A stretch of DNA of 59,782 nucleotides, the filler included, from Platydemus manokwari (lineage: Eukaryota), in the NCBI GenBank assembly GCA_037951405.1. It is 5 parts of 5 records of this genome, joined end to end, with 100 filler letters (N's around TTAATTAATTAA, not from the genome) between each part and the next. Parts side by side here need not be neighbours in the genome. Positions count along the whole stretch, not along the records: positions 11,649 to 27,892 come from JBBMOY011195876.1; 4 more parts are not named here. One strand, 5' to 3'. The notes under the pieces are model-generated. The model had not been told where the DNA came from, searched no databases, and saw only the letters and a program-made list of their open reading frames with translations. Positions within the stretch are counted from its first letter, which is position 1. The number at the start of each line of letters is the position of its first letter. The translations under genes and the position numbers were made by a program. Of the stretch, positions 11,649 to 27,892 are shown one piece after another.

Positions 11649-11684
11649 CACCCAGGTTATTGTTGAGGGTTCATATTGTAATTG

Positions 11685-11795
11685 TTAATTGATAATCTGT
11701 AATCATTTTATTTAATTGATAATCTATAATCATTATATTTAATTGATAATCTGTAATCATTTTATTTATTTGATAATCATTGTAGTCATTTTATT
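11685..11795. repeat. 27-bp minisatellite, about 4 copies
   Basis: Unit TTAATTGATAATCTGTAATCATTTTAT repeated with few changes, next to a contig end. Confidence 0.8.
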
Positions 11796-13104
11796 TTTTC
11801 TATTATTGCTTTTGGATAATCAGTTTAATATATCTTGGATAATTATTGTTTATATTCTCAATAATTGAAAAGTATTTGATATACAAGTGTTGATGTTACT
11901 TTGGATAATTGATAATTGTTACTAGTACATAAATTATTTCCATCTGACAACTATTTATTTCATCTTAATATTTATACATTTGTAATTGTCTCAATTACAC
12001 CCAACCTAACCGAGTCAACGAGAAATCTAACGTAACAATACCCTTTGTTGAAGCTCCTTAAAGCCAGTGTAGAAATAAAATTCCAAAACCAACCAATATA
12101 ATTTAATAATCATACTACAACTCAATATTAAATTATCACTCAAGACGAAAGTCGAATACAGAATAGAAGGCAACCAAGAAGACTGCCTATCAGAAAACTC
12201 ACACAAAACTCACAGAACAGAATGAACGTTATCTATTAAAAAAGACTGGTAGTTGCTCGTGAAATCCAACTTCTTCATAGGCTTATTATATGTGCCCACT
12301 TAATGTCCCAGAGGTTAGTTTTTAATTTGATAAATTTGTTTATACATTGATAGAAATTTCTCTTACATTTCTCATACCATTGCCGAATATTGATGTTGGC
12401 TGTCATTTGTTGGTATGAACCAGTCGATTATTGATTTCTAAATACGCATTGATATATAGTGAGAATCTGATTGGCTATTGGCGCATGTGATTTTTAAATC
12501 TTCGTATCAACCCTATAAGGGTTATTACCATGGTTAAAGAGAATATTTTGGCTGTTTTTACGACCCACTCAACAGAAGAATTAAGCAATTCTGTTAACCC
12601 GTTGATATCAGATGGAAATTCTTAAATTAAGTGCTATAATTTGATAAATGGTGTATTCGAATCCAATATCACTTCACATAATTTCAGAATAAGTTACAAC
12701 TTTGGAATGAATTCTTGTTTTGTTCTCATTATGTGAGTGTCATATCATTTCCAATCTAGCGGATAATGTTATTTGTAAGCCTTAAATAAAAACGTAACAG
12801 TAAACAGTAGTTTTCTTGTTAAAATGAGATTGATTTGAAATTAGTTTGAAATTCGTATAAACGTAAGACTTAATTAATGGTCTGACATTTTAATTTATAA
12901 TTACATTATGTTTTAATTAAAAATTCATTATCGCTGGGATATTATTATCATTATTAATATTGTTTTACTATTATGACTTAATCATTATTTGAATTACATT
13001 TTCTCGATTTATATGATTTATATTTTTGGATGTTTCCTAATTCCATGATTTCGTTATAATATGTATTGTAATAAAATATTAAATATTTTTTTTAATTGGT
13101 TGAT

Positions 13105-13234
13105 TGTTTGGTCAAGCATAAAACAATGTTTGGTCAAGCATAAAACAATGTGCTAAACGATTGTTTGGTAAAGCATAAAACAATGTTTGGTAAAGCATAA
13201 ATCAATTTGCCGGTTGATTGCTTGGATAATGCAT
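13105..13234. repeat. 22-bp tandem repeat with a 57-bp higher-order period, upstream of the poly-UBL gene
   Basis: TGTTTGGT(C/A)AAGCATAAAACAA at 13105, 13127, 13162 and 13184, plus a degenerate copy at 13219. Confidence 0.85.
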
Positions 13235-13370
13235 TGTGTGGTATTTAATGGTGCTTGTATTGATCTTGTTTAAATCATTACAACGATTTATTGATTTACA
13301 ATTAATTTTTTGTTCAGATATGATATTATTATAGATTTCTGATAAAAATCAATTAAAATTCAGAATTCCT

Positions 13371-15357
13371 ATGCAAATAATTATCAAAAATAATGACGGT
13401 GAAATTGTTACATTGGAAATATGTCCAAAGGAGAATGTTCAAGAATTGAAATTAAAAATTCAAGCAAAGATTGGAACCCAACCAGATAAACAATGTTTGG
13501 TGTTTCAAGGAAGAACATTGAATGATGGGAGTACTTTGCAAGAAACAGGAATATGTGATCAATCTGTTATAAATTTGGTTAGAATTTTGAGGTAATGATA
13601 TGGTTTGAAATTATTTGGTATTTAATAATTGGTTACTACAGAGATGGATGGATACAAATATTTATTATGAATCTTAATGGAGAAATGATTTTGTTGGACA
13701 TACAGGAATCCATAACCGTCAAACAACTGAAATTAAAAATTCAAGAAAAAATCGGAATCAAACCAGAAGCACAAAGATTATCGTTTCAAGGAGGAGATTT
13801 AGCAGATGAGTGTACTGTGGAGGATTACAGAATATATGATCAGTCTGTAATCGATTTGGTTATTAAATTGAGGTGATGAATTGATTTGAGATGATTTGGC
13901 ATTCAATAATTGTGCATTACAGAGGTGATGCGATGGAAATATTTATTGAAACGTTGGATGGAAAACAATTTGCTTTGGAAATGTGCCAGTTGGATACGGT
14001 TCGGGAACTGAAATATGAAATTGAAAAAAAAATCAATGCCAGACCAGATGATCAAAAATTAGTTTTTAAAGGAGGAATATTAAAGGATGACGAGCGCACA
14101 TTGGATGAATGCGGAATACGCGATAAATCTGTGATAAATCTGGTGACGAGATTGAGGTGATTTGATGGTTTTGAGATGATTTATTGATTGATCACCACAG
14201 ACATGGTTGGATGCGCATCGTTGTCAAAGAGAGCGATAGAAAGGAGTTTCTGCTGGAAATCTCCCCGTTTCGCTCGATTGACGAGTTGAAATTAAAAATT
14301 CATGAAAAAATTGGAGCCAAACCGAAAACACAAAGATTAACATTTGACGGAAGAAAATTAGAAGATGGGCGTACGCTGGACGATTACGGAATATTGGATC
14401 GATCTGTGATCAATCTAACGGTTCAATTAAGGTGATTGTAAGGTTTGAGATGATTTGGCATTCAATAATTTCTCACCCCCAGACCTGGATGGATAAAAAT
14501 ATTGATTAAAACGCCTTATGGGAATGAGCTTGCGTTTGAGGTGCGCTCATTCGCGACTGTCAAGCAGCTGAAATTGAAAATAAAAGATAAACTCGGAATC
14601 GAGCCAGATGAACAACAGTTACGGTTTCAAAATCAAATATTGGATGATGAGAGCACTCTGGGGGAATGTGGAGTACGCCATCAATCAGTGATGCGTGTCT
14701 TTGGGAGATTGAGGTAGTGAGATGGTTTGAAATCATTTGGCAGTCAATAATTTGACATCACAGACCTGGATGGATAAAAGTATTGATTGCGAGCTTTTGT
14801 GGGAATGAGTTTGCATTTGAATTACGCCCACTCGAGACAGTCCAGCAGCTGAAATCGAAAATTCGGGATAAATTCGGAATCGAACCCCATGAACAACAGT
14901 TACGGTTTCAAGATCGAACATTGTACGATGAGTGTACTTTGGATGAGTATGAAATAAGCGATCTCTCTACGGTGAGTTTGGTTAGGAAAATGAGGTATTG
15001 ATTTTATGGGAGATTATTTGATATTTAATAATTGGTTACCATAGAGATGGCATTCAAATATTTGTCAAATGTTTTGATGGCAAAGTGATGGAAATTGAAA
15101 TAAATCCAGTGTTGAAGGTCCAGCAATTGAAATTGTTGATTCAAGCGGAAATCGGAATTGAACCAGACGATCAAACGTTAATGTTTCAAGGAACTACTGT
15201 GTTAACTGATGAGCACAGTTTGGAGCATTTCACAATAGGCGATCAGTCATGGTTAAATTTGACATTCCAATTAAGGTGATTGAAATGGTTTGAGAATGAT
15301 TTGGTATTTGATAATTTGCCATACAGGCCTGGAAACAACGAAATGAAACTCCCATGA
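13371..15357 (+). CDS. poly-ubiquitin-like protein with 7 divergent UBL domains, one per exon (about 546 aa)
   Basis: Exons 13371-13591, 13642-13872, 13923-14156, 14201-14431, 14483-14713, 14764-14994, 15045-15275 and 15327-15357 total 1641 nt in one open frame. All seven introns are 44-51 nt, GT..AG, phase 2 in the Arg74 codon. Domain 1 is 32/74 identical to ubiquitin by manual count. A phase-2 acceptor at 13363 may indicate a further upstream exon. Confidence 0.88.
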
Positions 15358-17300
15358 CTATTCGATTCTCTCGCAGATGAAAAATTGTGATTTGAAAACA
15401 CATTCGTTCAATTTGCCGAGAATCGCAAGTACACAAATGAATTCGGTTATTTTATTGGTGTATATGGTTTTAAAACATATGTCGTTGTGTAGCCAGAATG
15501 TGTGATTTTGGCTGGTGATTATTTATTTAAATTTTGTATTTTGACATTTCTCTGATCTCTGTACTTTGATTATTCATGTTTTTTCTGTTCTTATTATTAA
15601 ACATTTTGTACAGAATTTTGTTTTCGTTCAGTTCGTGGAAAAGAGTGAGATTAATAAATACGTCGAGTTTAAGCATAATTAGAATTTCACAAATATCTTT
15701 AGCTTTTTCTAGGTATTGCGATCCTAATGTTCACAAATCAATTGTACTGTGTTCCTAAATGTTTCGAAGTGCTGATGTTGGGGTTGTGGTTTTGTTTTCC
15801 AAATCATTTTGTAATTCCTGTATTATCGGTTGAAACGCAATGCCAATTCGGTAGGTGCGGGGATTAAAATAATTTGGTCAAAATAAATCAATAATCAAAA
15901 ACAAAGATAATGTCCAGATTTCATATTTGAATCTATTACAAATACTCAAAATCGTATGATATAATAATACAGAGGACAAATTCAAATCTCTATCTTTTAA
16001 GATACGGTTCCATTCAATCAGACTTAATTAATTTTCCAATCGCCTAAAATTACGATATTCCCCAGTCATACACTTTGATCTGATAACGAACCTGCTTTGT
16101 CATGAAAATATAGATTTTAATTATTGCAGATTTTATGTGAACGAAATTGTTAAATCATATTTCTTTACTTTTTTAAAGTTGTTCAATAATTCGGGTCTAG
16201 GACTTCTTTTGTAAACCTCCGTCTGAATTATTTTTTGTGAGTGAATTTTCCTACTGCTTACATACTGATTATGAATTATTTTTATTATTTTCTTTTTAAA
16301 ATTATTTTATAAATCCGCCTACATTAATAATTTTAATTTATTGTTCTCTCACAATAATTTGATTAAGTTTACATTTTAAATAATTTATATTTCACCCTCA
16401 TTTATAAATTTTATTATAATTTTATTCATTATTATTATTCTCAAAAATATAATTTTGCCCGCCATAGATTTTTATTATAATTATACAATAAATTTTATTC
16501 AACAAAATTTTTTTACATATTAAAAAATGAAATTATCAAAAAATACCTACATATAAATTGTATATATTTTATGCAAAAATGATCTCAAAAATCAGTGTCT
16601 ACTTTTCACTTGGATTGTAGCTTTTGTAGGCTTTGGTAAGAGATTTGGATTTGGGGTTGGTATCCTTCATTCTGAAGACTGAAGACGGGGATTGAGAAGA
16701 TGATTGAAGGTTGTTGAGATTTAAATGTTATCGATATCGTTATGATTATATAACGTCATTTGAAACATTAAATGAAACTAGATTTCTATCAATAGAACGT
16801 TTTCATTCTAAATTAACAGAAGAAATAAGGAAGGAAGGGATGCTGAAACGAAAGAAAATATGGGAAAGAGAAGACAAAATAGAACAAATATTAAAATAAT
16901 TCTTCAGAATTTGGGTACTTTTAATTTTTTTTCGAACGTATCTGCGTTTCAATGAATTCTTGTTCTCGTTAACCACCATTTATTTCACAATTACTTCTAC
17001 CCGGTTCGTTTAATTATGTCATATTAGCATTGTTTTAGATTTTTTCATTATAAGAATGTTTTGAAAATTTTAATTAAAGCTTGAAAATCATGATCAATTA
17101 TTTGCCTTTATTATAACAAGATTTATATATGTCCATTGTGGTGTTCATTAAATCGGTTGCAGAATTCTTAAATCAATAAATAAATTTTAAATACAAACCT
17201 TGTTTTAATAATAATAAAATTATAAAAATTATTTAAAATTATTTTCTTGGATATTTTCAAACCATGGGAATTTTAATGAAAATCTTATTGATTATAATAG

Positions 17301-17957
17301 ATGAAAATTAGTGTTACAATTAGAACGTTAAATGGTATGACGGAGGATGTTACCATTACAGAAAATACCACAGTTGCTCAATTAAAATTGAAAATTGAAA
17401 ATATTTTTGGATTGCGTCCGAAAGAACAAAGATTGTTGTTAAATGATATCGTTCTTCTCAAAGATGACGAAAAGGTTATTAATTGTGGAATCAAAAGCGG
17501 AACCATTATTAAATTGTCAATCGTTCCGGGGTATTCATTTGGTTTATAAATAAACATTTTCTGACATTATTTTATTGATTATAAAATATTGGTTTTTGAT
17601 TGGATTTAAAGTGTTGAATTATTGATAATGCGAGACGAATAATCAATAATATTTCACCGTTTTTTAAAAGTGTTTTGTATATTTTAAATTATGAGAATAA
17701 ATGAACCAGCTTAACTCGATTATTGATTGTAGTAAATTCAATTTGACAGTTAATCCATTGGATGGGCGTAATATTGATATTGAGGTGACATCAAATGAAT
17801 CCGTGGCTGATTTGAAATGCAAAATCGAGAAAATATGTTCAATACCGATTGATGAACAGGTTTTGTTGTATAAAGGCAATCCTCTCGATGACAAATGCTC
17901 ACTATCGAGTTCTGGAATCTATGATTACAGTGTTATTTGTCTGATTCCGAAATTAAG
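17301..17957 (+). CDS. two UBL-domain exons (either a di-UBL gene or the 5' part of a 6-UBL gene continuing at 20863)
   Basis: Exon 17301-17530 (MKISVTIRTLNG..QRLLL..IVPG), phase-2 intron 17531-17732, exon 17733-17957 (KFNLTVNPLDG..QVLLYKGNPLDD..PKLR) ending in a phase-2 donor AG|GT. The 3' end is unresolved: local acceptor at 17994 versus distal acceptor at 20862. Confidence 0.75.
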
Positions 17958-18202
17958 GTGGATTTATTATTTAGTGAAAATTATTTATTATTAGATCAAT
18001 AGCTGTTTTGTTTTAAAATTGATTTTATTGATTTTATAATTAATTTTGATATATTTAATACTTAAAACTAAACACAGGCGCATACACATATATCTGTGTT
18101 AAGCGATAATCGATGAAAAGTAAATGGCCAGATAAATTCCAATCAATCGATAAGTGAATTATGAAGTGTTTAATTCCATGTCATATAAGATTTTTAGTAT
18201 TA

Positions 18203-18369
18203 CAGTATTTCTCTTCCTAACCACCAATTCCTCTTAACTGCCACATTTTTCCAATAACAAAAAACAAGATTTTCTTTTGACTTTTTTCTTTATTATTTAT
18301 TTATCAAGAACTCTTAACCGCCACATTTTTGCAATTCCTCAAATGTGACGGTTAGGAGGAGAAATACAG
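18203..18369. mobile_element. pogo/Tigger-like MITE (167 bp)
   Basis: TIRs CAGTATTTCTCTTCCTAACC and GGTTAGGAGGAGAAATACAG, flanked by TA on both sides. Internal repeats of CTCTTAAC(T/C)GCCACATTTTT. Confidence 0.85.
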
Positions 18370-19989
18370 TAGTAAGACTAAACCCGCACATCGATAGATT
18401 ATTTGGTGGTTTAATCAATAATTCTTCAAAACTGTCTTTAATGTCATCGATTGAATTCTATAAGAATAATGTTTTCACCACGTAATTAGTTACCGATGGT
18501 GTTTGTGAACTTGTGATTTGATGTTACTAATAATATCTGACTGTTGCTAGCTAAATTCTCTACTCTATTTTCACCTTAATAGAAATTTTATTGCGCGTTT
18601 TAACATAAATGCAAATATGTTCGACCAATATTATTAGACTGAATAAAGACTTTATTTTTGCCAAGAATTTCTGCAATAATTGATACTAAAAATAGCAATT
18701 GAGAAATGTGATCTTTATATTGAAGTGGTCTGAAATTAATATTAATTCTTGGAACTAATGAAATCCGATCCTTGTCAAAAAAGGTCTTTCTGTCTTTGGA
18801 CTTCAATATATATAAATGTTTAAAATCAATAAAAGATCACCCCACAGGTAACTTTATTAATGGTGAAAACATATCTGGAAATTTACTGGGATTTGGCCCA
18901 GAATTAGAAATTTATTTCTCTGAAAACTCGGTATCGTGAATAGATTAATTGATTTGCCCAATAATAATCTTGAAACATAATTGATTTGAGTGCTCGTGGA
19001 TGACTAATATTCGGTAAGCGAAATTTAAATATCTTTGTCAGGCGTCCAAATCTCTGATATTGTTGGGAATTCTGTGTTGTTTTTATCTTCTAATTTCCTT
19101 CTTAATTTCTTTTCGTTGCCTTGGAAATGTTTTGTTGTCATGGGATTTATATTTCTAAATTATAAGTTTTTTTCTGTTATAGAATTCATTGCAGTCAACT
19201 CCGATCAATTATTCTTCAATAAAAGCACAATCCAATAATTTGAATCGATTGTTTCTGTTTTCAAAGAGAATTAAAGTTCACATTGATCGTTAAATTTTGT
19301 TTTTAATTTAGTTTTCCTTTTCGTGCTTGAGTTGTTTAAGCTATCTGGTAATTATGTTCTAGCCTGTTGCGACTTAATTATCGATTAATTACTTGAAGAA
19401 ACAAGTCGAATTCTTGCTAAATAATATCTCCATTATTTCTGCTTCATTTGATATTTTTATTCAGATTTGTTTCGTGACTTTATATGATAAAATCTTCGGG
19501 ATTCATTTCTATAAAAGATATTTTGTAAGTGGCTATAGGGGTATCCCTAATTCAACTATTGACAGTTCTCATAAGTAATCCACTGCTAGACAGGTTTCGT
19601 AATCCTTTATACTAATTATTTTACGAGAAGATGAAGATCATTTCGTTCATGCTCACATTCAATCCCAATTGGCCGAGGGACATGTTGAAACGGCATTTCG
19701 GTTTCATATTATTTAGCCAAAAGGAAACTCATTTTGTCACAATTAATTCAACTTTAACCCAGAGAAAATTTGCTGACATAGACATTATGTGATTAGATAA
19801 GTGGAAGGATTTTTGTTGATTTCATTGTCTTCAGTAAAATACACGCACTTGACCAGAGAATAGATCATTTGGATTACAGAAATGTGCTTAAATTATATTG
19901 TAAAGATTTTAATGTAATAAGTTTCGAAAAATATTTATTTATAATCGACGTATTCTCAAGACTGATCTCTAAATCACAATACATTAAAC

Positions 19990-20341
19990 CAGTGGTCTTC
20001 ACACGTTTTGTGTTGCGACCCACTTTACGAATCTAAAATTTTCGCGACCCCTAGGAACTAAAATAAAAATAATAAAAACAATTTTTTTAATACATTTTTT
20101 TTAACACCAAAAAATTGAAATATATTTAATAATAACGACGATTTTGCATACTCTGGCATAAAATATCAAATTTTAGCTCTATTTCGGTGATGGCTGATGT
20201 CGGTACTAATTCCACATCTTTAAAATTCGATCGATATTTTGTCTTAATATAAGTCAGTGTCGAAAATGAAATTTCTCGCGACCCCCAAAAAACTTTTCAC
20301 AACCCACTGGTGGGTCGCGCGTCCCATTTTAAAGAACTCTG
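19990..20341 (-). mobile_element. non-autonomous hAT (Charlie/Buster-type) element
   Basis: Ends CAGTGGTCTTC and AAAGAACTCTG, subterminal GCGACCC repeats, 8-bp TSD CATTAAAC/CATTAATT (6/8). The minus strand encodes a Buster-type transposase C-terminus EISFSTLTYIKTKYRSNFKDVE..EIELKFDILC. Confidence 0.85.
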
Positions 20342-20862
20342 CATTAATTTATCCTATAATTATCGATATTATTATGAAAATCATTATTCAACCGACCTGT
20401 TAGTAACCCACGAAAATATGGAATAATTGACTAAGGAAACCTGTTGTACTGCTTTATACTGCAAGAATTGCTGGGGGAATGCATATTTATTGATATATTG
20501 ACTTTCACTGGATTCGAATCATTAATAATAGCATAGTTATTATAGCAACAAATATTGATTCATTTATTGATAATTTGTGATATTATTTCGTGTTACAATA
20601 AGCTTTTTAATAAAAGCGTGATTTTAAGAATCATAACTAAGTCTAGTGTTGTTAAATCGGCAACACTGTGCCCATTAATGTTTATTAAATTCGAAATGTT
20701 CGAGACATTTTAAATTTATGTAATATTTTTAAACCATCACGTGTCTGAAGATTTCCAGTGTAAATTGGTAATCGATTGAGCCATTTCTACTATATTTATA
20801 TGTGAAAAACAGCTCAGTTTTCAATTTTCTGATAATCAATAAGTATTTTATTGAAATATTAG

Positions 20863-21927
20863 CAATAAGACTCAAGTACGCGCCAAAACATTAGACGGTA
20901 AAATCGTGGCATTGGAGATTAATGAAAACAAGACGATTCGTGACTTGAAAATGGAAATTCAAGGAAAATTAGGATTAGATCCTGATGATCAAATATTGAT
21001 TTTACTCGGAGCCATTTTAGATGATGTTGAAATGGTGGATGCTTGTGGCATCAATAGTGATTCGGTGATTAATATAATTGTTAAATCTAGGTATTGATTT
21101 GATGATATACAACTTTTTAATTTGTGGAATACAAATTCAGATTTATACAGATCCGCGTCAAAACATTGAAAGGAGAAGTTATTAAATTGGAAATCAATAA
21201 AAAATGGACAATTCGTGATTTAAAAATTGAAATTGAAAAGAAATTGAAAATAAATCCCGACGATCAAAGATTGGTGTTTGAAGGATATCTTTTAGAAGAT
21301 GAAAAATTGGTGGACGAATGTGGAATCTATAATGGATCAGTTGTTAATGCCATTGTAAAAATAGCGTAAGGAAATATTATTGGATTCGTGATAAATAATT
21401 ATTGTCGCGAAAATTGTAGAAATAAAATACGATTGTATATCAAACCGTTGAAAGGAGAAAAACTCCCATTTGAAATTTTGAAAAATTCAACTATTCGTGA
21501 CATAAAATTGAAAATCCAAGAGAAATTGAAACACGATCCCTATGATCAGAGATTAATATTTCAAGGCAAGCTTTTGGAGGATGGTAAATCGTTGGATGAT
21601 TATGGAATCGATGACCAATCGGTGATTAATGCAGTCTTTGTATTTAGGTAACGATTTGACATTATGTGACGAGAAGAAATTATTTCGGTATTATCGATTA
21701 TTTTCAGCTTATACATCCAGATGTTCGATGGTATGAGGCATAAAATTGAAATTCCTAAATATTACACTATTGGGATCTTGAAATTAAAAATCCAAGATGA
21801 ATTAAATTTTCATTCAGATGAGCAAAAATTAATTTTTCAAGGTCATGTTTTAATCGATAATCAATCAATAATAGATTGTCAATTGAAAAGTGGGTCGATA
21901 ATTCAACTGGTGAAATGCACAAAGTAA
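20863..21927 (+). CDS. four UBL-domain exons (3' part of a second poly-UBL gene)
   Basis: Exons 20863-21090, 21141-21365, 21420-21647 and 21708-21927; phase-2 introns of 50, 54 and 60 nt; open when spliced. The first exon starts at a phase-2 acceptor with no Met at the domain start, so an upstream exon is likely needed. The third domain is closest to ubiquitin (QRLIFQGKLLEDGKSLDDYGI). Confidence 0.85.
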
Positions 21928-22134
21928 TCAATTATTCTATATTTCAATTGATTATTGTGTTTATTGATTATTTATTGAATCGTTTCATTATTTAAAAATT
22001 TTGTACTTTCAAATAAAGCTGCTTGTTGATGTGGGATGATATGTTATGAAATATTGCTTTAAATTATTGAAAAATGAATAATAGTGTGTCCATCGATGTG
22101 TGATGAATTGTTGTTGTCAGTGTCACAATCAATC

Positions 22135-22602
22135 AGTAGTTGATAATAAAATTGACTGGTGGATGTGTGAGTTTGAATTCATCAGTGACCAAATTATGCA
22201 CTGCTGGACTCGAGATCCAATCGCGTACTGATGATTATTAACGAATTTATCTATCGGAGAACTACCTGTTGTGATCGATAATGTTTCAATCAATAAATTC
22301 TGATTAAACCACAAATTTGTATTAACAATTTAAGCTTAATGATTATTCATTAAATCGATAAATAATTATTGATATTCTTTACATTTTTAGAGAGTGATAA
22401 ATGGATCTCGAATTTAACGTCACTGAAACAATAAGCAAGATCCAGGGAAATATGAAAACGAATATCGGAAATTATTGATTATTTTCTTTTATGAACCATT
22501 TTTAAAAGATTGCCATCCCATTTTATTGGTAAATAATTCTCAAGAAATATCCCATACCGTATTAAGATGGAATGAAATAATAGATCCGAGAATTATATTT
22601 TA
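22135..22602 (+). pseudogene. about two decayed UBL exons trailing the array
   Basis: Frameshifted UBL-like fragments LEIQSRTDDY*RIYL and MDLEFNVTETISKIQGNMKTNIG..LIIFF..FLKD..HTVLR. The spacer between them ends in TTTTTAG at 22390 and shares GATAAATAATTATTG (22357-22371) with the intron sequence at 21390-21404. Confidence 0.45.
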
Positions 22603-24653
22603 ATTTATATTATAATTATATTATTCAGAACAATCGATAATAAAAATGTTATTCAATTACAATCTTTGAACATTTTCCTTCTCGATTTTACATTTTTTGA
22701 AATTTATTTTGTTTTTTGGATTCTGGATTTCTCCAGTTATTTTATGCCTTCATATCGGCATAATCTCAATGATATTTGACTAAAATACAATAAAATCAAT
22801 CTTGGTTTCGTTTGTCTTATTGATAATTTTTTGTGTGAGGTTATAATTCACATAATTTGAGATTGTACTGATTTGTGTTTGGTTTGTTTAATCGAAATAG
22901 AAATTGTTAAATATCTGGGATGAAATTAAGAAAAAGGGACCTTTGACCTACTTTCGTAATGATGAATTTTCGCGCATGAGATAATTTTATAATTTAATTT
23001 TATAAATAATTGCGATGTTTGATTTATTCGTGCAATTCAGTTGATATCTCACATTTGTAGAATGTCGAATAGGGACAAGTTCCTATCCTAATCAGATCAC
23101 TTCTAGGATTCTTTTATTTTGTAAATTTAAATTTATTTAATTATAAATCAACATAGGAAACTCATGACATGTTTAATAGAATGATAATACTTGTTTCTAA
23201 CAGATGGTTGTAAAAATACAAAATATCACTCAATTTGCTTCTAAGATTAAAAAAAGAAGTCCCCGCAAGTTTTCAATAAATTACAATTCGACCTACTTTG
23301 ATCCGTTTTTTACATGATCCAATTCTATGTGTTTTCGAAGCTCTCGTTTATTTAATATTTGATTTCAAACAAATAAAGTTCTTGATTACTTAAATAAAAA
23401 TTAAAAAAAAATAAAAAATCCTAAAGTATTATCTGATAAAAATTTTGTCTATTCCACTAAATAATTTAAAATTGCATTTCTTGTCTACCAGTTAAGGAAT
23501 TTTATTTCAGTTTGTTACTTACCCAATAAAATTTGTAATCAACCCTAGGTTGTTATCATTAATATTATTATTTATATTATTTACAGTGCAAGCATTGTAT
23601 ACCGCCGTCATTATCAAAGTTGGTGTCTAAATTATTGTTGGGACCTACGCTTAAATTATGGTCCTTATTATCAGTGAGGATATTGAAACCAATTAGCATT
23701 TGAATGATCATTTTAAATATAAAATATATTGATATTCAGTAATGTATATTATCGATTTAATTTTTTGAATATCATGCTAGCTATATTTTCGAAACTAAAC
23801 TTAGAATGATTAATGAGTGTCTTTTTACTGTTGATTAGTTTACCAACTAGAACGAAAAAGGAAATATTGATTCAGCAATAAACACGCTTAGATAAATTTG
23901 CTCATGAAGCTGATGAGTGACTTCAAATTAAGAACTTTTTTACATTTAAGCTGATAGAGATAGATATTCTATTGAAAGTAGATGCGTGCCTGCTGTGGAA
24001 GGAGTGTGGTAAAGATAAGGAATGCAACAGCCAACGATTACATAGAATTTTGGTTCTATGAGACGTTCATTAGGATAGAAGCAGGATTAAAAATATCGTA
24101 TATTCGTAAATCCAACAATTTGTTTTATAGTAATTAAAAATCTTTTTAAATAAGGCGGAGTTAAGATTTAAACTCATTCTAGAAAAGTTAAATATTTTAT
24201 TTCGGGCATTGTCTTCATACTAAGCTCATAAAATCGTTGCAATATCTAGTGATGTAGAAGAGATAATCTTATTTTTAAAATATCGATAACTTTAATTATC
24301 GATTAATAAAATCAATAATCACCAAAGGATTATTTCAGTGAAACAAACAAAATTTAATTAACATCATAATTATAGTGAGAAACGTTTCTAAACGATATGT
24401 AAAACGAAGCTGCAGCTGGACACACAAATTTAAAATCAGTATCTTTATTGGGGTTGAAAAAATAACTAAATTGAACCAACTTTTTATTATTCTGTGTGAC
24501 GACAGGCATTGAACATTTGCTATATTGATTAATTTTTATTATATTCTTTTATGTTGGATTAGACCAATATTAATTTTTTTTATAATATGACAATTCATGT
24601 TTAATAAAAATGATATTTATAAAATAATACATTGCGATTCATAAGTCACCGTC

Positions 24654-25143
24654 TCTAAAACTAAAATAAAACAAGAATATTTGAAAGGTTTTATTTTTTA
24701 CTTTGTGAAGTCACGAACACTCGTGCAGTTTCTTGTTGATTTGTGCCATCTTTCTCTTTTACAAAATTTACCACCTTTTCCTTCATGATTTCATCAGACG
24801 GTCTTCTTGATCGCAACCTAGTGGATAAGTTTCCAGTTTATTCAAACTTCTGTTTCCAGTATTGCATTGTTGTCTTATCTGATGGTGGATAATTGTAATG
24901 TTGCTGAAATTCTTGGCAAGCTTCGGCACTACTCTGGTACATCATTGAATAACTAACTATAAACACTATTCGCAAGCAAAAATTTAACATCACCAACTGT
25001 TTCTGCTATATTTTAATAATGGAACTCATTAATAAGAAATAAGAAATAAAACACATTAATCAGTGAATAATAATGAATATCAATAAGTATAAATATGTGA
25101 GTATAAATTATATTGTGTTTTGTTGTTTTATTTTAGTTTTAGA
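24654..25143 (-). mobile_element. internally deleted Tc1/mariner-superfamily transposon
   Basis: Perfect 21-bp inverted repeats at 24654-24674 and 25123-25143. The minus strand (24990 to about 24700) encodes an N-terminal HTH region, RIVFIVSY..EFQQHYNYPPSDKTTMQYWKQKFE*TGN..RSRRP, with an internal stop. Confidence 0.8.
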
Positions 25144-25699
25144 AATTGAAAGACAGATTTAAAATTTTTTTTAAATATTCTTACTATTTTTAATAGCCAT
25201 TGATTATTTAACTTTCAATATTTTTGAAAACAAAATCTTATTGATAAAGGGTGATAATCGATTTTCGTACTTAATAGGTTCCGAGATTGAAAATGGAAGT
25301 CGAAACGTGACATAAAAAAGAACAATGAAAAAAGAAGTATTTTAAAAACATTATTTTTCTAAAACATGTATTAACATGCATTGATAAATAAACATGTTAT
25401 TGATTATGATCTGGTGTTTTATTTATCAATTGAACTTCATTAAATTATATTACTCACAATTTTATCGGTTCATATTGATTTGATCTCATTGATAAATTCA
25501 CTACTAAATATGTGTGAAATATGGATTTGTATGACAATCAGGGACAGACTAAATATTTTAATCAATAATTAATTTTTTAAATGTTACGAAAACATTTTAA
25601 AATTTATATTAGCAACATTATTGAAACAATATAATCACCCTTCAAGAAAATATGCGACAAACAATTAACGTCATTGAAGATAAACATAACATAATACTG

Positions 25700-26005
25700 A
25701 TAAAATGCATGATAATAATAATCGTAAAAATAATTATCAGTATTTTAAAATCAACTGTGATAATAATAATGGCCATAAATAATTGTAACAGAAGAATCAA
25801 TAATAATAATAATAGTGAGAATAATAATAATAATAATGATGGTAACTATAACCACAATAATAATGTTATAATAGTCATAATACTCTTAATAATAATTATG
25901 ATAATGTCAATGATGATAATATTGGTGGTGATAATAATAATTGTAATAATAATGTTAATAATAAAAAATAATAATTATTATAATTAAATAAAGATGATAA
26001 TGATA
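25700..26005. repeat. degenerate (AAT)n microsatellite / low-complexity tract
   Basis: Runs of AATAATAAT with scattered substitutions. Confidence 0.85.
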
Positions 26006-26196
26006 TGCACACCATTATTTTTCAAACAGCATTTCAAGCAAAATTAGATTTCACCAAGAAATTTGATTGTAACCTCGACATCATCCCCTAAATATGGAAT
26101 TAAGAAATATATAAAAATTCCAATAACAAAATTAAAATTTCCCCAAAAGACTCTTATATATTAGGCAATATAATTGTTTATAAACTCAAAATTAAC

Positions 26197-26577
26197 TTTA
26201 AATTTAACGTTGTCAAAGTCCACTAGGTGAGGTGTATCACAAACCGAAAGAATTTCAATTCCTAATTGGCCAGAAGCGCCCATTCCAAATGTATAAAGCT
26301 CCCCTGATGCAGTCACAACAGCACTGTGCATATGACCACAATCACCCTGAGATGAATTTTTATTTTTAAAACACTGATTCCATTATTATTTATACCATAA
26401 TTGCACCTTTGCCTCTAAGAGTTTCTACTAACTTCGGCTTTTTCAAAGTGGTTGCATGTCCATGACCCAATTTTCCATAAGATCCTATACCCCAAGTGAA
26501 AACCTCTCCAAATGAAGTAATAGCCATGATATGACTTTCCGGACCACGAGATGCCGCTACGAAAGTTACTTTGTAAT
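26197..26577 (-). CDS. RCC1-repeat (RLD) exons, HERC1-like E3 ligase fragment
   Basis: Exons 26577-26396 and 26346-26197 (49-nt intron) encode YKVTFVAASRGPESHIMAITSFGEVFTWGIGSYGKLGHGHATTLKKPKLVETLRGKGAIM|GDCGHMHSAVVTASGELYTFGMGASGQLG. This resembles HERC1 RLD1 as I recall it (SSSKGSDGHTLAFTTEGEVFSWGDGDYGKLGHG). Neighbouring exons were not found. Confidence 0.78.
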
Positions 26578-27398
26578 CTGAAAATATTATGAAAACAAAT
26601 CCTTAAACAATTAATAATATATACCTATTAATATAAACCTATATAATATTATAACAATACGGCATATTATCTTTTAATAATACATATGTTTTCAAAAATT
26701 CATATATAAAAGATAGGGATTGAACTAAATAAATTAGGGGATTATTTAATGTAATCGTTTAATATTCAACAATACTTCTACATCAAAATTATTGATTTCA
26801 TAGTGTGAAGTTTATTTGAAGATACGATAAATAATTAAAATTTACGAACGATTAAAATTATTAAAAATTGAGCCAAAAAATATTTTTACAAAATTATATT
26901 AAAAATTCATATAGCATATCAATATTTATAAAAGGATCTTGCTTAAAAAATACTGTTAAACTCTCAGTTTTAAAATTATTATAATTATTAAAATTATTAA
27001 AGATAAAATTCAAATCTTTTACAAAAATAAGATGTAATATAAATAAATCTGGGCATATTTATATTTGGATGAAGACAAATCAGGTGGAAATAAATTTAAA
27101 TTTAATATTTAAAATTGTTTTGAAAATTGATGAATTGGCGAACAATTTTTTGTTTTATTGTGAACATGACTTTTGATTTGAATATCAAGAATGAAGAAAT
27201 TTCGGTAACTAACACCTGGACTGCAAAAATATCGGTGATTCAAGAAAATATGATGAAAATAAATCAGGAAATATCTAATATCAAATAATTGAGATAATTA
27301 ATGAATAATAGGGGCTAAATGATTGTCATCATAAATATAAATATTTCTTTAAATAAAATCGAAAATATTTCATTGATTGCAACCTTAGTATACCTGTC

Positions 27399-27710
27399 CA
27401 TTGTTGAGGAACTATATCACGGAGCCGACCAAATTTTATAAAAATATTCGGGACCGGAGCCAAAAGAAAACTTAAATATTGAAGCGACTCCTACCATTTA
27501 TATAACTGCTACCCAAGGCTTGACATAAGATTTTTCTTAAAGTTCAAACTATTTTTAAGGATATCTTAGCCCGGATGAGTGCTAAATAATCTAACTGGTA
27601 CACAACTGACTGTATAAAAAAATTTCTTTCAAAGTTATTTTAATATTTTTATTTAGTTTTATAATATCGGATCCGGAGTCACATTGATTTCGTTCATTCC
27701 TTCCAGCCCT
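27399..27710. mobile_element. possible degenerate hAT-type MITE
   Basis: Clustered GGAGCC/GGAGTC/GACTCC subterminal-type motifs and a right end TTCCAGCCCT in AT-rich context. The left end is poorly conserved. Confidence 0.3.
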
Positions 27711-27892
27711 TATGTTCATGCCTGAATGTATAAGATTTGAAAGCCTACGTTAATCTTTATGTATTTATAAATCATGATTTAATTCTAAATTATCTTTGTG
27801 AAAATATATAATAGAACATAATTTTGTATTGATCTAGATTAGACATGAATAATTCGGTAACAATGATTCGTAAATAATTAAAATTAATCATA

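What the first reader, a model, noticed from the sequence alone, without database searches (positions are those of the whole stretch)
13586..15357. Gly-Gly motif replaced at every inter-domain junction: a non-cleavable, non-conjugatable chain
Seen: spliced junctions read ILR-DG-W, KLR-GD-A, RLR-HG-W, QLR-PG-W, RLR-PG-W, KMR-DG-I and QLR-PG-NNEMKLP*. Junctions in the later arrays (VPG-KF, KSR-FI, KIA-NK, VFS-LY) also lack GG. Established: deubiquitinase processing and E1 activation of ubiquitin need the C-terminal di-Gly. Inference: the product stays as one beads-on-a-string protein resembling a DUB-resistant linear chain. It might be a decoy for host or pathogen DUBs, or it might be cut by a dedicated protease recognising R-x-G.
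Basis: partly seen in the sequence, partly recalled or inferred. Interest (0 to 1): 0.75.

Follow-up and report, generated by a model that had tools for sequence, protein, structure and literature searches.

The report
Seven-domain ubiquitin-like gene lacking Gly-Gly
This is an intact gene for a string of seven diverged ubiquitin-like domains, one per exon, none followed by the Gly-Gly that ubiquitin needs for cutting and attachment; it belongs to a large gene family found only in this (probably planarian) genome and of unknown function.

Summary
Splicing seven 44-51 nt GT-AG introns, all in phase 2, joins eight exons (13371-15357, + strand) into one 546-codon frame of 63.0 kDa. It encodes seven PF00240 domains. 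The junctions read exactly as reported (LR-DG-W, LR-GD-A, LR-HG-W, LR-PG-W twice, MR-DG-I, LR-PGNNEMKLP-stop). No alternative in-frame splice restores GG.

The gene is not a one-off. The same assembly holds at least 20 contigs with such arrays. Units group by position in the array, so an already multi-domain gene was copied whole, promoter and introns included. None of 48 family junctions reads LRGG. dN/dS is about 0.4-0.8, and the frame is open where neutral drift would add about 6 or more stops.

"Cannot be cut or conjugated by the canonical machinery" is a sound inference but untested. The "linear-chain mimic or DUB decoy" idea is not supported: K48, K63 and H68 are absent from all units, I44 is replaced in all seven, and L8 survives in two. 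A dedicated R-x-G protease is also weakly supported, because the linker varies.

Multi-UBL proteins without GG exist in other eukaryotes, but nothing closer than ubiquitin itself (43-47% identity) was found. RNA evidence could not be obtained.

The parts
13317..13370 (+). Promoter-proximal block conserved among paralogs: an AT-rich TATA-like stretch (TATTATA at 13327), then AAATTCAG-ARTTCC directly before the ATG (13356-13373). The latter may be a 5'UTR or trans-splice acceptor, or an initiator.
   Evidence: Alignment of the upstream 160 nt of 8 first units; motif positions. The promoter role is inferred, not tested.
13371..13591 (+). Exon 1, UBL unit 1 (starts at Met, aligned with ubiquitin M1).
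   Evidence: PF00240 E=1.1e-18; 43% identical to ubiquitin in PDB alignments.
13592..13641 (+). Intron 1, 50 nt, GT-AG, phase 2; the in-frame stop TAA follows the Arg codon if it is retained.
13642..13872 (+). Exon 2, UBL unit 2 (231 nt).
   Evidence: PF00240 E=2.7e-18
13873..13922 (+). Intron 2, 50 nt; holds the exact 27-nt core at 13885-13911.
13923..14156 (+). Exon 3, UBL unit 3 (234 nt); the most conserved unit across paralogs.
   Evidence: PF00240 E=5e-21; dN 0.06-0.14 against paralogs
14157..14200 (+). Intron 3, 44 nt.
14201..14431 (+). Exon 4, UBL unit 4.
   Evidence: PF00240 E=2e-17
14432..14482 (+). Intron 4, 51 nt; holds the exact 27-nt core at 14444-14470, identical to that of intron 2.
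14483..14713 (+). Exon 5, UBL unit 5.
   Evidence: PF00240 E=3.4e-16
14714..14763 (+). Intron 5, 50 nt.
14764..14994 (+). Exon 6, UBL unit 6; a recent duplicate of unit 5 (281-nt period, 76% match).
   Evidence: PF00240 E=5.2e-18; TRF; sister units in the tree; AlphaFold2 pLDDT 94 and TM 0.93-0.97 to ubiquitin
14995..15044 (+). Intron 6, 50 nt (GTAT donor, TAG acceptor).
15045..15275 (+). Exon 7, UBL unit 7.
   Evidence: PF00240 E=1.2e-13
15276..15326 (+). Intron 7, 51 nt.
15327..15357 (+). Exon 8, a 31-nt terminal mini-exon giving (R)PGNNEMKLP and the stop TGA. It begins like the start of another unit (RPG-), so it may be the stump of an eighth unit.
   Evidence: comparison with the RPGW starts of units 5 and 6. 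The stump reading is inference.
15653..15658 (+). AATAAA, a candidate polyadenylation signal about 300 nt after the stop.
   Evidence: not tested
17301..17957 (+). Second multi-UBL gene: exon 17301-17530, a 202-nt phase-2 intron, then exon 17733-17957, which ends in another AG|GT phase-2 donor (so the gene continues). The junction reads VPG-KF.
   Evidence: PF00240 E=5e-15 and 6e-14; sequence; paralog on L017
20855..21927 (+). Third multi-UBL gene, four units. Exons: ?-21090, 21141-21365, 21420-21647 and 21708-21927 (stop TAA). Introns: 50, 54 and 60 nt, phase 2. The start codon was not found.
26164..26602 (-). Two exons of a neighbouring RCC1-like-domain gene. It is not part of the UBL genes and is given as context.
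   Evidence: PF00415 E=1e-7 and 9e-9; PF25390 positions 253-346

Best explanation
Positions 13371-15357 hold an intact, selectively maintained nuclear gene of an AT-rich animal, most likely a triclad flatworm. Its mRNA joins eight exons into a 546-residue cytosolic protein made only of seven diverged ubiquitin-fold domains linked by two-residue spacers.

The gene arose from a ubiquitin-like unit that already carried a phase-2 intron in its last Arg codon. Exon plus intron was multiplied in tandem. The finished multi-unit gene was then copied many times in this genome, with birth-and-death turnover.

Every junction and the C-terminus lack LRGG, so the product is not cut into monomers by ordinary deubiquitinases and cannot be adenylated by an E1. 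It therefore acts as one polypeptide through non-covalent contacts, as integral (type-2) ubiquitin-like domains do. Only fold-core residues are shared by all units, while each positional unit is conserved across paralogs. This suggests that each unit offers its own surface, so the chain would be a multivalent adaptor or scaffold rather than a ubiquitin mimic.

Shown: gene structure, domains, fold, absence of GG, family and selection. Inferred: splicing in vivo, lack of processing, scaffold role and organism.
For: - Gene model and junctions.
- Domains: seven PF00240 hits.
- Fold: pLDDT 94, TM 0.93-0.97 to ubiquitin.
- Family size: at least 150 PF00240 matches in the assembly and at least 20 contigs with look-alike arrays, while true polyubiquitin (LRLRGG-M, no introns) sits elsewhere.
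- Whole-gene duplication: units cluster by position, with starred support for the u3 and u4 clades; the upstream block is conserved; introns are conserved by position.
- Junctions in the family: 0 of 48 read LRGG, all are phase 2, and the modal intron length is 50 nt.
- Selection: median dN/dS is 0.42-0.76 in six positional clades. Simulated neutral change of only 5% per site gives a mean of 6.1 stops and 0 of 2000 open frames.
- Ubiquitin recognition residues are lost.
- Only core columns are nearly invariant, equivalent to Ub K27, I30, Q41, L43, F45, L50, I61 and S65.
- Literature: in Schmidtea mediterranea, PF00240 is the commonest Pfam domain among triclad-specific transcripts (12 transcripts; PMC4046745). 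This fits a transcribed triclad-specific UBL family.
Against:
- About 11 of 94 family units are truncated, so part of the family is decaying.
- dN/dS near 0.5-0.76 shows weak constraint.
- Six of seven junctions keep a Gly at the ubiquitin-76 position, and single-Gly ends suffice for UFM1 and ATG8 (own knowledge). Processing by an unknown protease is therefore not excluded.
- The assembly mixes organisms. It has four different COX1 genes, only one with the flatworm code, and some HSP70 genes have in-frame TAA. The assignment of this contig to the flatworm rests on composition, contig size and the literature hint.
- No partner or function is known.
Confidence: 0.6

Rival explanations
1. Precursor of single-Gly-ended modifiers. 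A dedicated protease cuts after the x-G of each junction and releases UBL monomers ending in one Gly. These are then conjugated by a non-ubiquitin E1, as in UFM1 or ATG8.
For: Six of seven junctions in this gene have Gly at the position of ubiquitin G76, and L73-R74 is kept in 6 of 7. Across the family, Gly at +2 is the commonest residue (26 of 48). UFM1 and ATG8 are processed to a single C-terminal Gly (own knowledge).
Against: Across the family the would-be site is not conserved: Arg in 33 of 48, Gly in 26 of 48, Asp in 12 of 48, and +1 is free. The L-R may be held by the splice donor TTGAG|GT rather than by a protease. The units differ strongly from each other (35-55% identity), which is unlike a precursor of one modifier. 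Terminal units of the arrays end without Gly.
Confidence: 0.1
2. A dead or dying copy of a polyubiquitin-derived gene: a transcribed or silent pseudogene array without function.
For: The units have lost the ubiquitin functional residues. Constraint is weak, with dN/dS up to 0.76. Several paralogous arrays carry truncated units. Retrotransposon fragments flank several arrays. No relative was found in public protein sets.
Against: The gene has 546 open codons, seven intact splice-site pairs and an intact start, although divergence from paralogs is dS 0.2-0.9. Neutral simulation gives no open frame in 2000 trials at 5% change. dN is below dS in every clade. All indels between exons are in frame, while the introns carry free indels. 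The promoter block is conserved.
Confidence: 0.1
3. One reading: a DUB-resistant mimic of a linear (M1-linked) ubiquitin chain that soaks up deubiquitinases or linear-chain readers.
For: The domains are joined head-to-tail with two-residue spacers, the same spacing as linear polyubiquitin. There is no GG, so the protein would resist cleavage.
Against: The I44/L8/H68/V70 patch and R72, which DUBs, UBAN and NZF domains read, are not kept. Identity to ubiquitin is 34-45% (26-34 of 76). The units differ from one another. No surface column is conserved across 56 units.
Confidence: 0.05

Closest known systems
Polyubiquitin precursor genes (UBB/UBC/UBI4 type)
   Same: Head-to-tail ubiquitin-fold repeats of about 76-78 residues with no long linker, and a short extra tail after the last unit. 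Ubiquitin is the nearest sequence found for every unit (43-47% identity).
   Different: In polyubiquitin the units are identical, are joined LRGG-M, are kept alike by concerted evolution, and carry no intron at the unit junctions. The genome's own copy is like that (L010). Here the units are 35-55% alike, every junction has a phase-2 intron, and GG is absent throughout.
ISG15 and FAT10 (tandem di-UBL modifiers of vertebrates)
   Same: Diverged ubiquitin-like domains stay joined in one chain because the internal junction has no GG. These genes evolve fast and are lineage-restricted (own knowledge; PMC9722776 and PMC3248901 listed).
   Different: Those proteins have two domains and a free C-terminal GG used for conjugation. 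This protein has seven domains and ends ...LRPGNNEMKLP, with no terminal GG.
Integral (type-2) ubiquitin-like domains of Rad23, ubiquilin and BAG6 type
   Same: A PF00240 fold without GG, not cleaved and not conjugated, acting by non-covalent binding (own knowledge).
   Different: Those proteins carry one UBL plus other functional domains, and they usually keep the I44 patch for the proteasome receptors. Here there are only UBLs, seven in a row, and the patch is not kept.
Uncharacterised multi-UBL proteins in public proteomes, e.g. Cylindrotheca closterium CAJ1957214.1 / UniRef100_A0AAD2FZ01 ('Ubiquitin-like domain-containing protein', 1420 aa, 16 UBLs) and a Pseudo-nitzschia model
   Same: Long chains of 7-26 diverged PF00240 domains with no GG at the junctions. 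Many of the 150 best profile hits are of this kind.
   Different: There is no specific kinship. Their domains score no higher against the family profile than ubiquitin does (at most 88 bits per domain), and their junction styles differ (e.g. direct M-Q-I-x-V-K starts). They look like independent inventions. None has been studied.
Triclad-specific PF00240 transcripts of Schmidtea mediterranea (Kao et al. 2013, PMC4046745)
   Same: A planarian-restricted set of ubiquitin-domain transcripts, noted as the commonest Pfam domain among triclad-specific transcripts. They may be the same family.
   Different: The paper gives only a count of 12 transcripts, with no sequences, architecture or junctions. 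Identity with this family was not testable here.

Membership tests
Ubiquitin family domain (Pfam PF00240, beta-grasp fold) | Significant match to the family profile over the whole domain | tested here: met
   Seven of seven units match, 51-75 bits against a cut-off of 25.4, covering profile positions 1-72.
Ubiquitin family domain (Pfam PF00240, beta-grasp fold) | beta-beta-alpha-beta-beta fold superposable on ubiquitin | tested here: met
   AlphaFold2 model of unit 6 with a 56-sequence alignment: pLDDT 94. Foldseek gives TM 0.93-0.97 and rmsd 0.5-1.9 A to ubiquitin chains.
Polyubiquitin precursor | Junctions ...LRLRGG-MQIF..., cleavable by deubiquitinases | tested here: not met
   0 of 7 junctions here and 0 of 48 in the family read LRGG. 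No alternative splice restores it. Cleavage itself was not tested.
Polyubiquitin precursor | Repeats encode identical or near-identical ubiquitin | tested here: not met
   Units are 35-55% identical to each other and 26-34 of 76 residues identical to ubiquitin.
Conjugatable ubiquitin-like modifier (type 1: ubiquitin, NEDD8, SUMO, ISG15, FAT10) | Mature C-terminus ending in Gly-Gly, free or exposed by processing | tested here: not met
   The C-terminus is ...QLRPGNNEMKLP. The internal junctions are DG, GD, HG, PG, PG and DG.
Conjugatable ubiquitin-like modifier (type 1: ubiquitin, NEDD8, SUMO, ISG15, FAT10) | Activation by an E1 and transfer to substrates | not testable with these tools
   This needs thioester and conjugation assays.
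Mimic of linear (M1) polyubiquitin | Retention of the L8-I44-H68-V70 patch and of R72/L73/R74, which are read by DUBs and linear-chain readers | tested here: not met
   I44 is kept in 0 of 7 (V, S, V, T, R, R, M), L8 in 2 of 7, H68 in 0 of 7, V70 in 4 of 7 and R72 in 2 of 7. Only L73-R74 is kept, in 6 of 7.
Integral (type-2) UBL-domain proteins | UBL fold embedded in a longer polypeptide, without a processing or conjugation motif | tested here: met
   'Embedded' holds only if the predicted splicing occurs, and no RNA evidence was available.
Integral (type-2) UBL-domain proteins | Non-covalent binding to a receptor (proteasome or other) | not testable with these tools
   No partner is known. 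The joined protein could not be sent to folding or complex tools.

The most novel reading that the evidence does not exclude
The family is a cassette system. Every internal exon is one UBL domain, 231 or 234 nt long and flanked by phase-2 introns, so any subset of exons can be joined in frame. The 27-nt intron core is identical between different introns whose flanking domains have diverged to 35-45% identity. It would be the signal that controls which look-alike exons are joined. The organism would thus make a combinatorial repertoire of multi-UBL chains from 20 or more loci, for a lineage-specific process such as defence or regeneration signalling.
Probability: 0.1. Interest if true: 0.7.

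Novelty: new variant of a known kind. Interest (0 to 1): 0.45.

Why it matters
Ubiquitin-fold domains that cannot be conjugated are usually single modules inside larger proteins. Here a protein consists of nothing else, seven in a row, and it belongs to a family of at least 20 loci that has no relative closer than ubiquitin in about 1.8 billion representative proteins. If the organism is a planarian, this puts sequence, architecture and gene structure behind a 2013 one-line remark: that ubiquitin-domain transcripts top the list of triclad-specific genes, a class that is enriched among regeneration-regulated transcripts.

The gene structure is also a clear example of repeat growth by exon-plus-intron duplication. 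It carries an unexplained intron core that is more conserved than the coding sequence.

The practical value is modest until expression and a phenotype are shown. The architecture as such, chains of UBLs without GG, has arisen in several eukaryotic lineages and is not new in kind.

Tried and rejected
- Tools not available: the search of earlier findings, the look-up of sequencing runs (read laying was therefore unusable) and the look-up of encoding contigs. As a result there is no RNA evidence and no sample name.
Everything was done exon by exon, by reference. The joined frame was only translated in a local script for length and mass. No two-domain or full-length model could therefore be made.
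- Word search with unit 3, exact look-up of 8 window ORFs and word search with the 56-unit alignment found nothing.
- ESM Atlas returned only generic ubiquitin-family clusters.
- Profile search of 1.84 billion representatives returned many multi-UBL proteins but none closer than ubiquitin. Hits below the best 150 (total score under 362 bits, i.e. family members with fewer than about 4 units) could not be inspected.
- Literature searches for tandem, poly- or multi-UBL proteins gave nothing specific. Only one search gave the planarian remark.
- Ciliate genetic code considered and rejected: no in-frame TAA or TAG in 546 codons, and every Gln is therefore encoded by CAA or CAG.
- Each exon as its own small gene, using ATGs inside the introns, considered and rejected: the upstream frames are open in only some introns, and the organism is a eukaryote.
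- A stable RNA structure in the introns rejected: z-scores run from -2.5 to +0.6 with no common fold.
- Rfam found nothing on the whole piece.
Full report
WHAT IS THERE

The piece (11649-27892) is AT-rich DNA, GC 0.19-0.39, with the look of a eukaryotic nuclear genome with very short introns. Between 13371 and 15357 on the + strand lie seven open segments of 220-234 nt and a short eighth. Each segment ends in TTGAG|GT or a close variant. Each is followed 44-51 nt later by YAG.

Removing these seven GT-AG introns joins the eight exons into one frame of 1641 nt, which is 546 codons and 63.0 kDa. All introns are in phase 2. They split an AGR arginine codon that aligns with ubiquitin R74.

Every large exon is a ubiquitin-family domain, with PF00240 E-values from 1e-13 to 5e-21. 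Unit 1 aligns with ubiquitin over 73 residues at 43% identity. A model of unit 6 built on a 56-sequence alignment has pLDDT 94. It superposes on ubiquitin with TM 0.93-0.97.

THE OBSERVATION

The junctions read ILR-DG-W, KLR-GD-A, RLR-HG-W, QLR-PG-W, RLR-PG-W and KMR-DG-I. The end reads QLR-PGNNEMKLP-stop.

I listed all GT/GC donors and AG acceptors near each junction. The stated splice is the only open, in-frame choice at junctions 1-4. The single extra choice at junctions 5 and 6 removes part of a domain. None yields GG. That script returned nothing for junction 7, which rests.

The junctions quoted for the two later arrays on the piece are also right.

IT IS ONE OF A FAMILY

A PF00240 scan of the whole assembly gives at least 150 matches. 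The assembly is 911 Mb in 1.99 million contigs. Many matches stand in tandem arrays with about 280-nt spacing on at least 20 other contigs. I fetched twenty of these contigs.

The genome's true polyubiquitin is a different locus (L010). It has identical units joined LRLRGG-M, with no intron at the unit junctions.

In a tree of 80 units, the units group by their position in the array and not by locus. There are clades for units 1, 2, 3 and 4 and for two kinds of unit 5. The unit 3 and unit 4 clades have starred support. So a gene that already had several different units was copied as a whole.

The copies share three further features:
- the 60-nt block before the ATG, with a TATA-like stretch and AAATTCAG-ARTTCC-ATG;
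- the intron positions;
- much of the intron sequence.

Units 5 and 6 of the window gene are a younger internal duplicate, with a 281-nt period and 76% match.

In 48 well-supported family junctions:
- all introns are phase 2 (the filter for this set), and the modal length is 50 nt;
- the split codon is Arg in 33;
- the next residue is free (D, G, H, P, S, I and others);
- the second is Gly in 26 and Asp in 12;
- the third is Trp in 26;
- LRGG occurs in none.

Some unit-2 donors in paralogs appear to be GC instead of GT, judging from ORF ends that read LRQ-stop.

IS IT ALIVE?

Between positional counterparts in different loci, dS is 0.2-0.9 and the median dN/dS is 0.42-0.76. These are therefore old paralogs and not alleles, and constraint on them is weak but real.

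In a simulation, random change of only 5% per site put a mean of 6.1 stop codons into the 546-codon frame and left it open in 0 of 2000 trials. The real frame is open, with a start codon and seven splice-site pairs.

Length differences between units are whole codons (231 against 234 nt), whereas introns differ by free indels. About 11 of 94 units in the other loci are truncated, so the family turns over by birth and death. The window gene is among the intact ones.

WHAT THE PROTEIN CAN AND CANNOT DO

I aligned the units to the genome's own ubiquitin:
- the units share 26-34 of 76 residues with it;
- K48, K63 and H68 are absent from all seven;
- I44 is V, S, V, T, R, R, M;
- L8 survives in two units and R72 in two;
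- only L73-R74 (six of seven) and a Gly at position 76 (six of seven) recall the ubiquitin tail, and the L-R coincides with the splice donor TTGAG|GT.

Across 56 family units, the only nearly invariant columns are fold-core positions. They are equivalent to ubiquitin K27, I30, Q41, L43, F45, L50, I61 and S65.

From established knowledge of E1 enzymes and of USP, UCH and OTU proteases, a chain without Gly-Gly is not activated and not cleaved. A chain that has lost the I44 patch is not a credible mimic of linear polyubiquitin, so the decoy idea is not supported.

A dedicated R-x-G protease is not excluded, since UFM1 and ATG8 need only one Gly. However, the variable linker in the family argues against a conserved cleavage site.

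My best reading is an unprocessed, non-conjugatable seven-UBL chain that works through non-covalent contacts, with each positional unit offering its own surface. Unit 3 is the most conserved (dN 0.06-0.14).

There is no signal peptide and no other domain. The function is unknown. The scaffold or adaptor role is an inference, to which I give about even odds within the 0.6 overall.

RELATIVES ELSEWHERE

- Word-based searches with unit 3 and with the 56-unit alignment found nothing.
- Exact look-ups of eight window ORFs found nothing.
- A profile search of 1.84 billion representative proteins gave 48,420 hits. The best 150 are either canonical polyubiquitins or long chains of 7-26 diverged UBLs without GG.
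- Named examples of the latter are diatom 'Ubiquitin-like domain-containing proteins' (Cylindrotheca, Pseudo-nitzschia).
- None has a domain that scores above 88 bits on the family profile, which is what ubiquitin scores.
- By BLAST, the nearest sequence to every window unit is plain ubiquitin or something equally distant, at 37-47% identity.

So the architecture has arisen repeatedly, but this family has no sampled relative. Members with fewer than about four units would lie below the 150 rows shown.

THE ORGANISM

A mitochondrial-type HSP70 on a contig of the same composition is 90% identical to Dugesia japonica mortalin.

One of four complete COX1 genes in the assembly uses AAA where the others have Asn codons, and ATA where they have Ile codons. 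That is the flatworm mitochondrial code. The other three use ATA like Met. Some HSP70 genes carry in-frame TAA.

The assembly therefore mixes a flatworm with other organisms. The UBL contigs are long for this assembly and numerous, which fits the main organism, but this is inference.

A 2013 paper on Schmidtea mediterranea notes that PF00240 is the commonest Pfam domain among triclad-specific transcripts (12 transcripts). It also notes that triclad-specific transcripts are enriched among regeneration-regulated ones (PMC4046745). That fits, but it gives no sequences.

AN UNEXPLAINED DETAIL

A 27-nt core (TTTGAGATGATTTGRCATTCAATAATT) lies inside the junction introns. It occurs 38 times in the assembly at up to 3 mismatches (13 exact), against 0 for the reversed control, largely on contigs that also carry UBL matches (compare).

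It is identical in introns 2 and 4 of the window gene, whose flanking domains are only 35-45% identical. Within the gene, introns are 69% identical and exons 61%. Between paralogs, intron distance (0.15-0.38) is at or below exon dS (0.23-0.53).

It does not fold. The TTCAAT part may be the branch point. The rest is unexplained.

VERDICT

I class it as a new variant of a known kind (non-conjugatable UBL-domain proteins and multi-UBL chains). It belongs to a lineage-restricted, expanded family with an unusual one-domain-per-exon structure. Interest is moderate.

Noticed in passing
window 13885-13911 and 14444-14470 (also 13604-13630 and 14726-14752); L001-L020: A 27-nt intron core is identical in different introns whose flanking UBL domains are only 35-45% identical. 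It occurs 38 times in the assembly (reversed control 0), largely on contigs that also carry UBL matches. Introns are as conserved as synonymous sites, or more so. No RNA fold was found.
   Followed up: partly
window 13098-13234: A tandem repeat of a 22-nt unit (TGTTTGGTAAAGCATAAAACAA, nested in a 57-nt period) lies 140-270 nt upstream of the start codon. It may be a regulatory element or a simple satellite.
   Followed up: no
window 13642-15275: All internal exons are 231 or 234 nt and lie between phase-2 introns, so skipping any of them keeps the reading frame. Retaining an intron puts a stop codon directly after the Arg codon (one codon later for intron 6). Nested or shuffled isoforms are therefore possible in principle.
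   Followed up: no
window 17301-17957 and 20855-21927: Two further multi-UBL genes lie on the same strand of the same contig. One has two units with a 202-nt intron and an open donor at its end. The other has four units and no start codon was found. Their units are more diverged (42-80 bits on the unit profile), and the units of the third gene group with the terminal units of other arrays.
   Followed up: partly
window 26164-26602 (- strand): Two exons of an RCC1-like-domain gene (PF00415, PF25390 positions 253-346). Whether it is a HERC-type ubiquitin ligase could not be seen, because the rest of the gene was not found.
   Followed up: partly
window 24694-25005 (- strand): Short open frames resemble the N-terminal helix-turn-helix part of a mariner/Tc1-type transposase (resemblance from memory). 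Pfam gave no hit.
   Followed up: partly
G000 contigs C1514745, C1389203, C1344449, C1440324 (L021, L022, L023, L027): The assembly holds four different complete COX1 genes (64-85% amino-acid identity). Only L027 shows the flatworm mitochondrial code (AAA as Asn, ATA as Ile). Several HSP70 genes have in-frame TAA, as in ciliates. The 'genome' is therefore a mixture of organisms.
   Followed up: partly
L001, L002, L003, L005, L007, L008, L018 (intron after unit 2): The donor of the intron after unit 2 appears to be GC instead of GT in most paralogs (the ORF ends read ...LRQ-stop), whereas the window gene has GT there. This would be a conserved GC-AG intron within the family.
   Followed up: no
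L002, L007, L011 (flanks of the arrays): Retrotransposon reverse-transcriptase-like and integrase-like open frames lie next to several arrays (judged by eye, not scanned). They may have helped to spread the family.
   Followed up: no
unit 3 and its flanking introns: window 13873-14200 and the counterparts in L001-L018: This block has much lower divergence between paralogs (dS about 0.2, intron distance 0.15-0.22) than units 1, 2 and 4 of the same genes (dS 0.43-0.53). That suggests gene conversion or constraint at the nucleotide level.
   Followed up: partly
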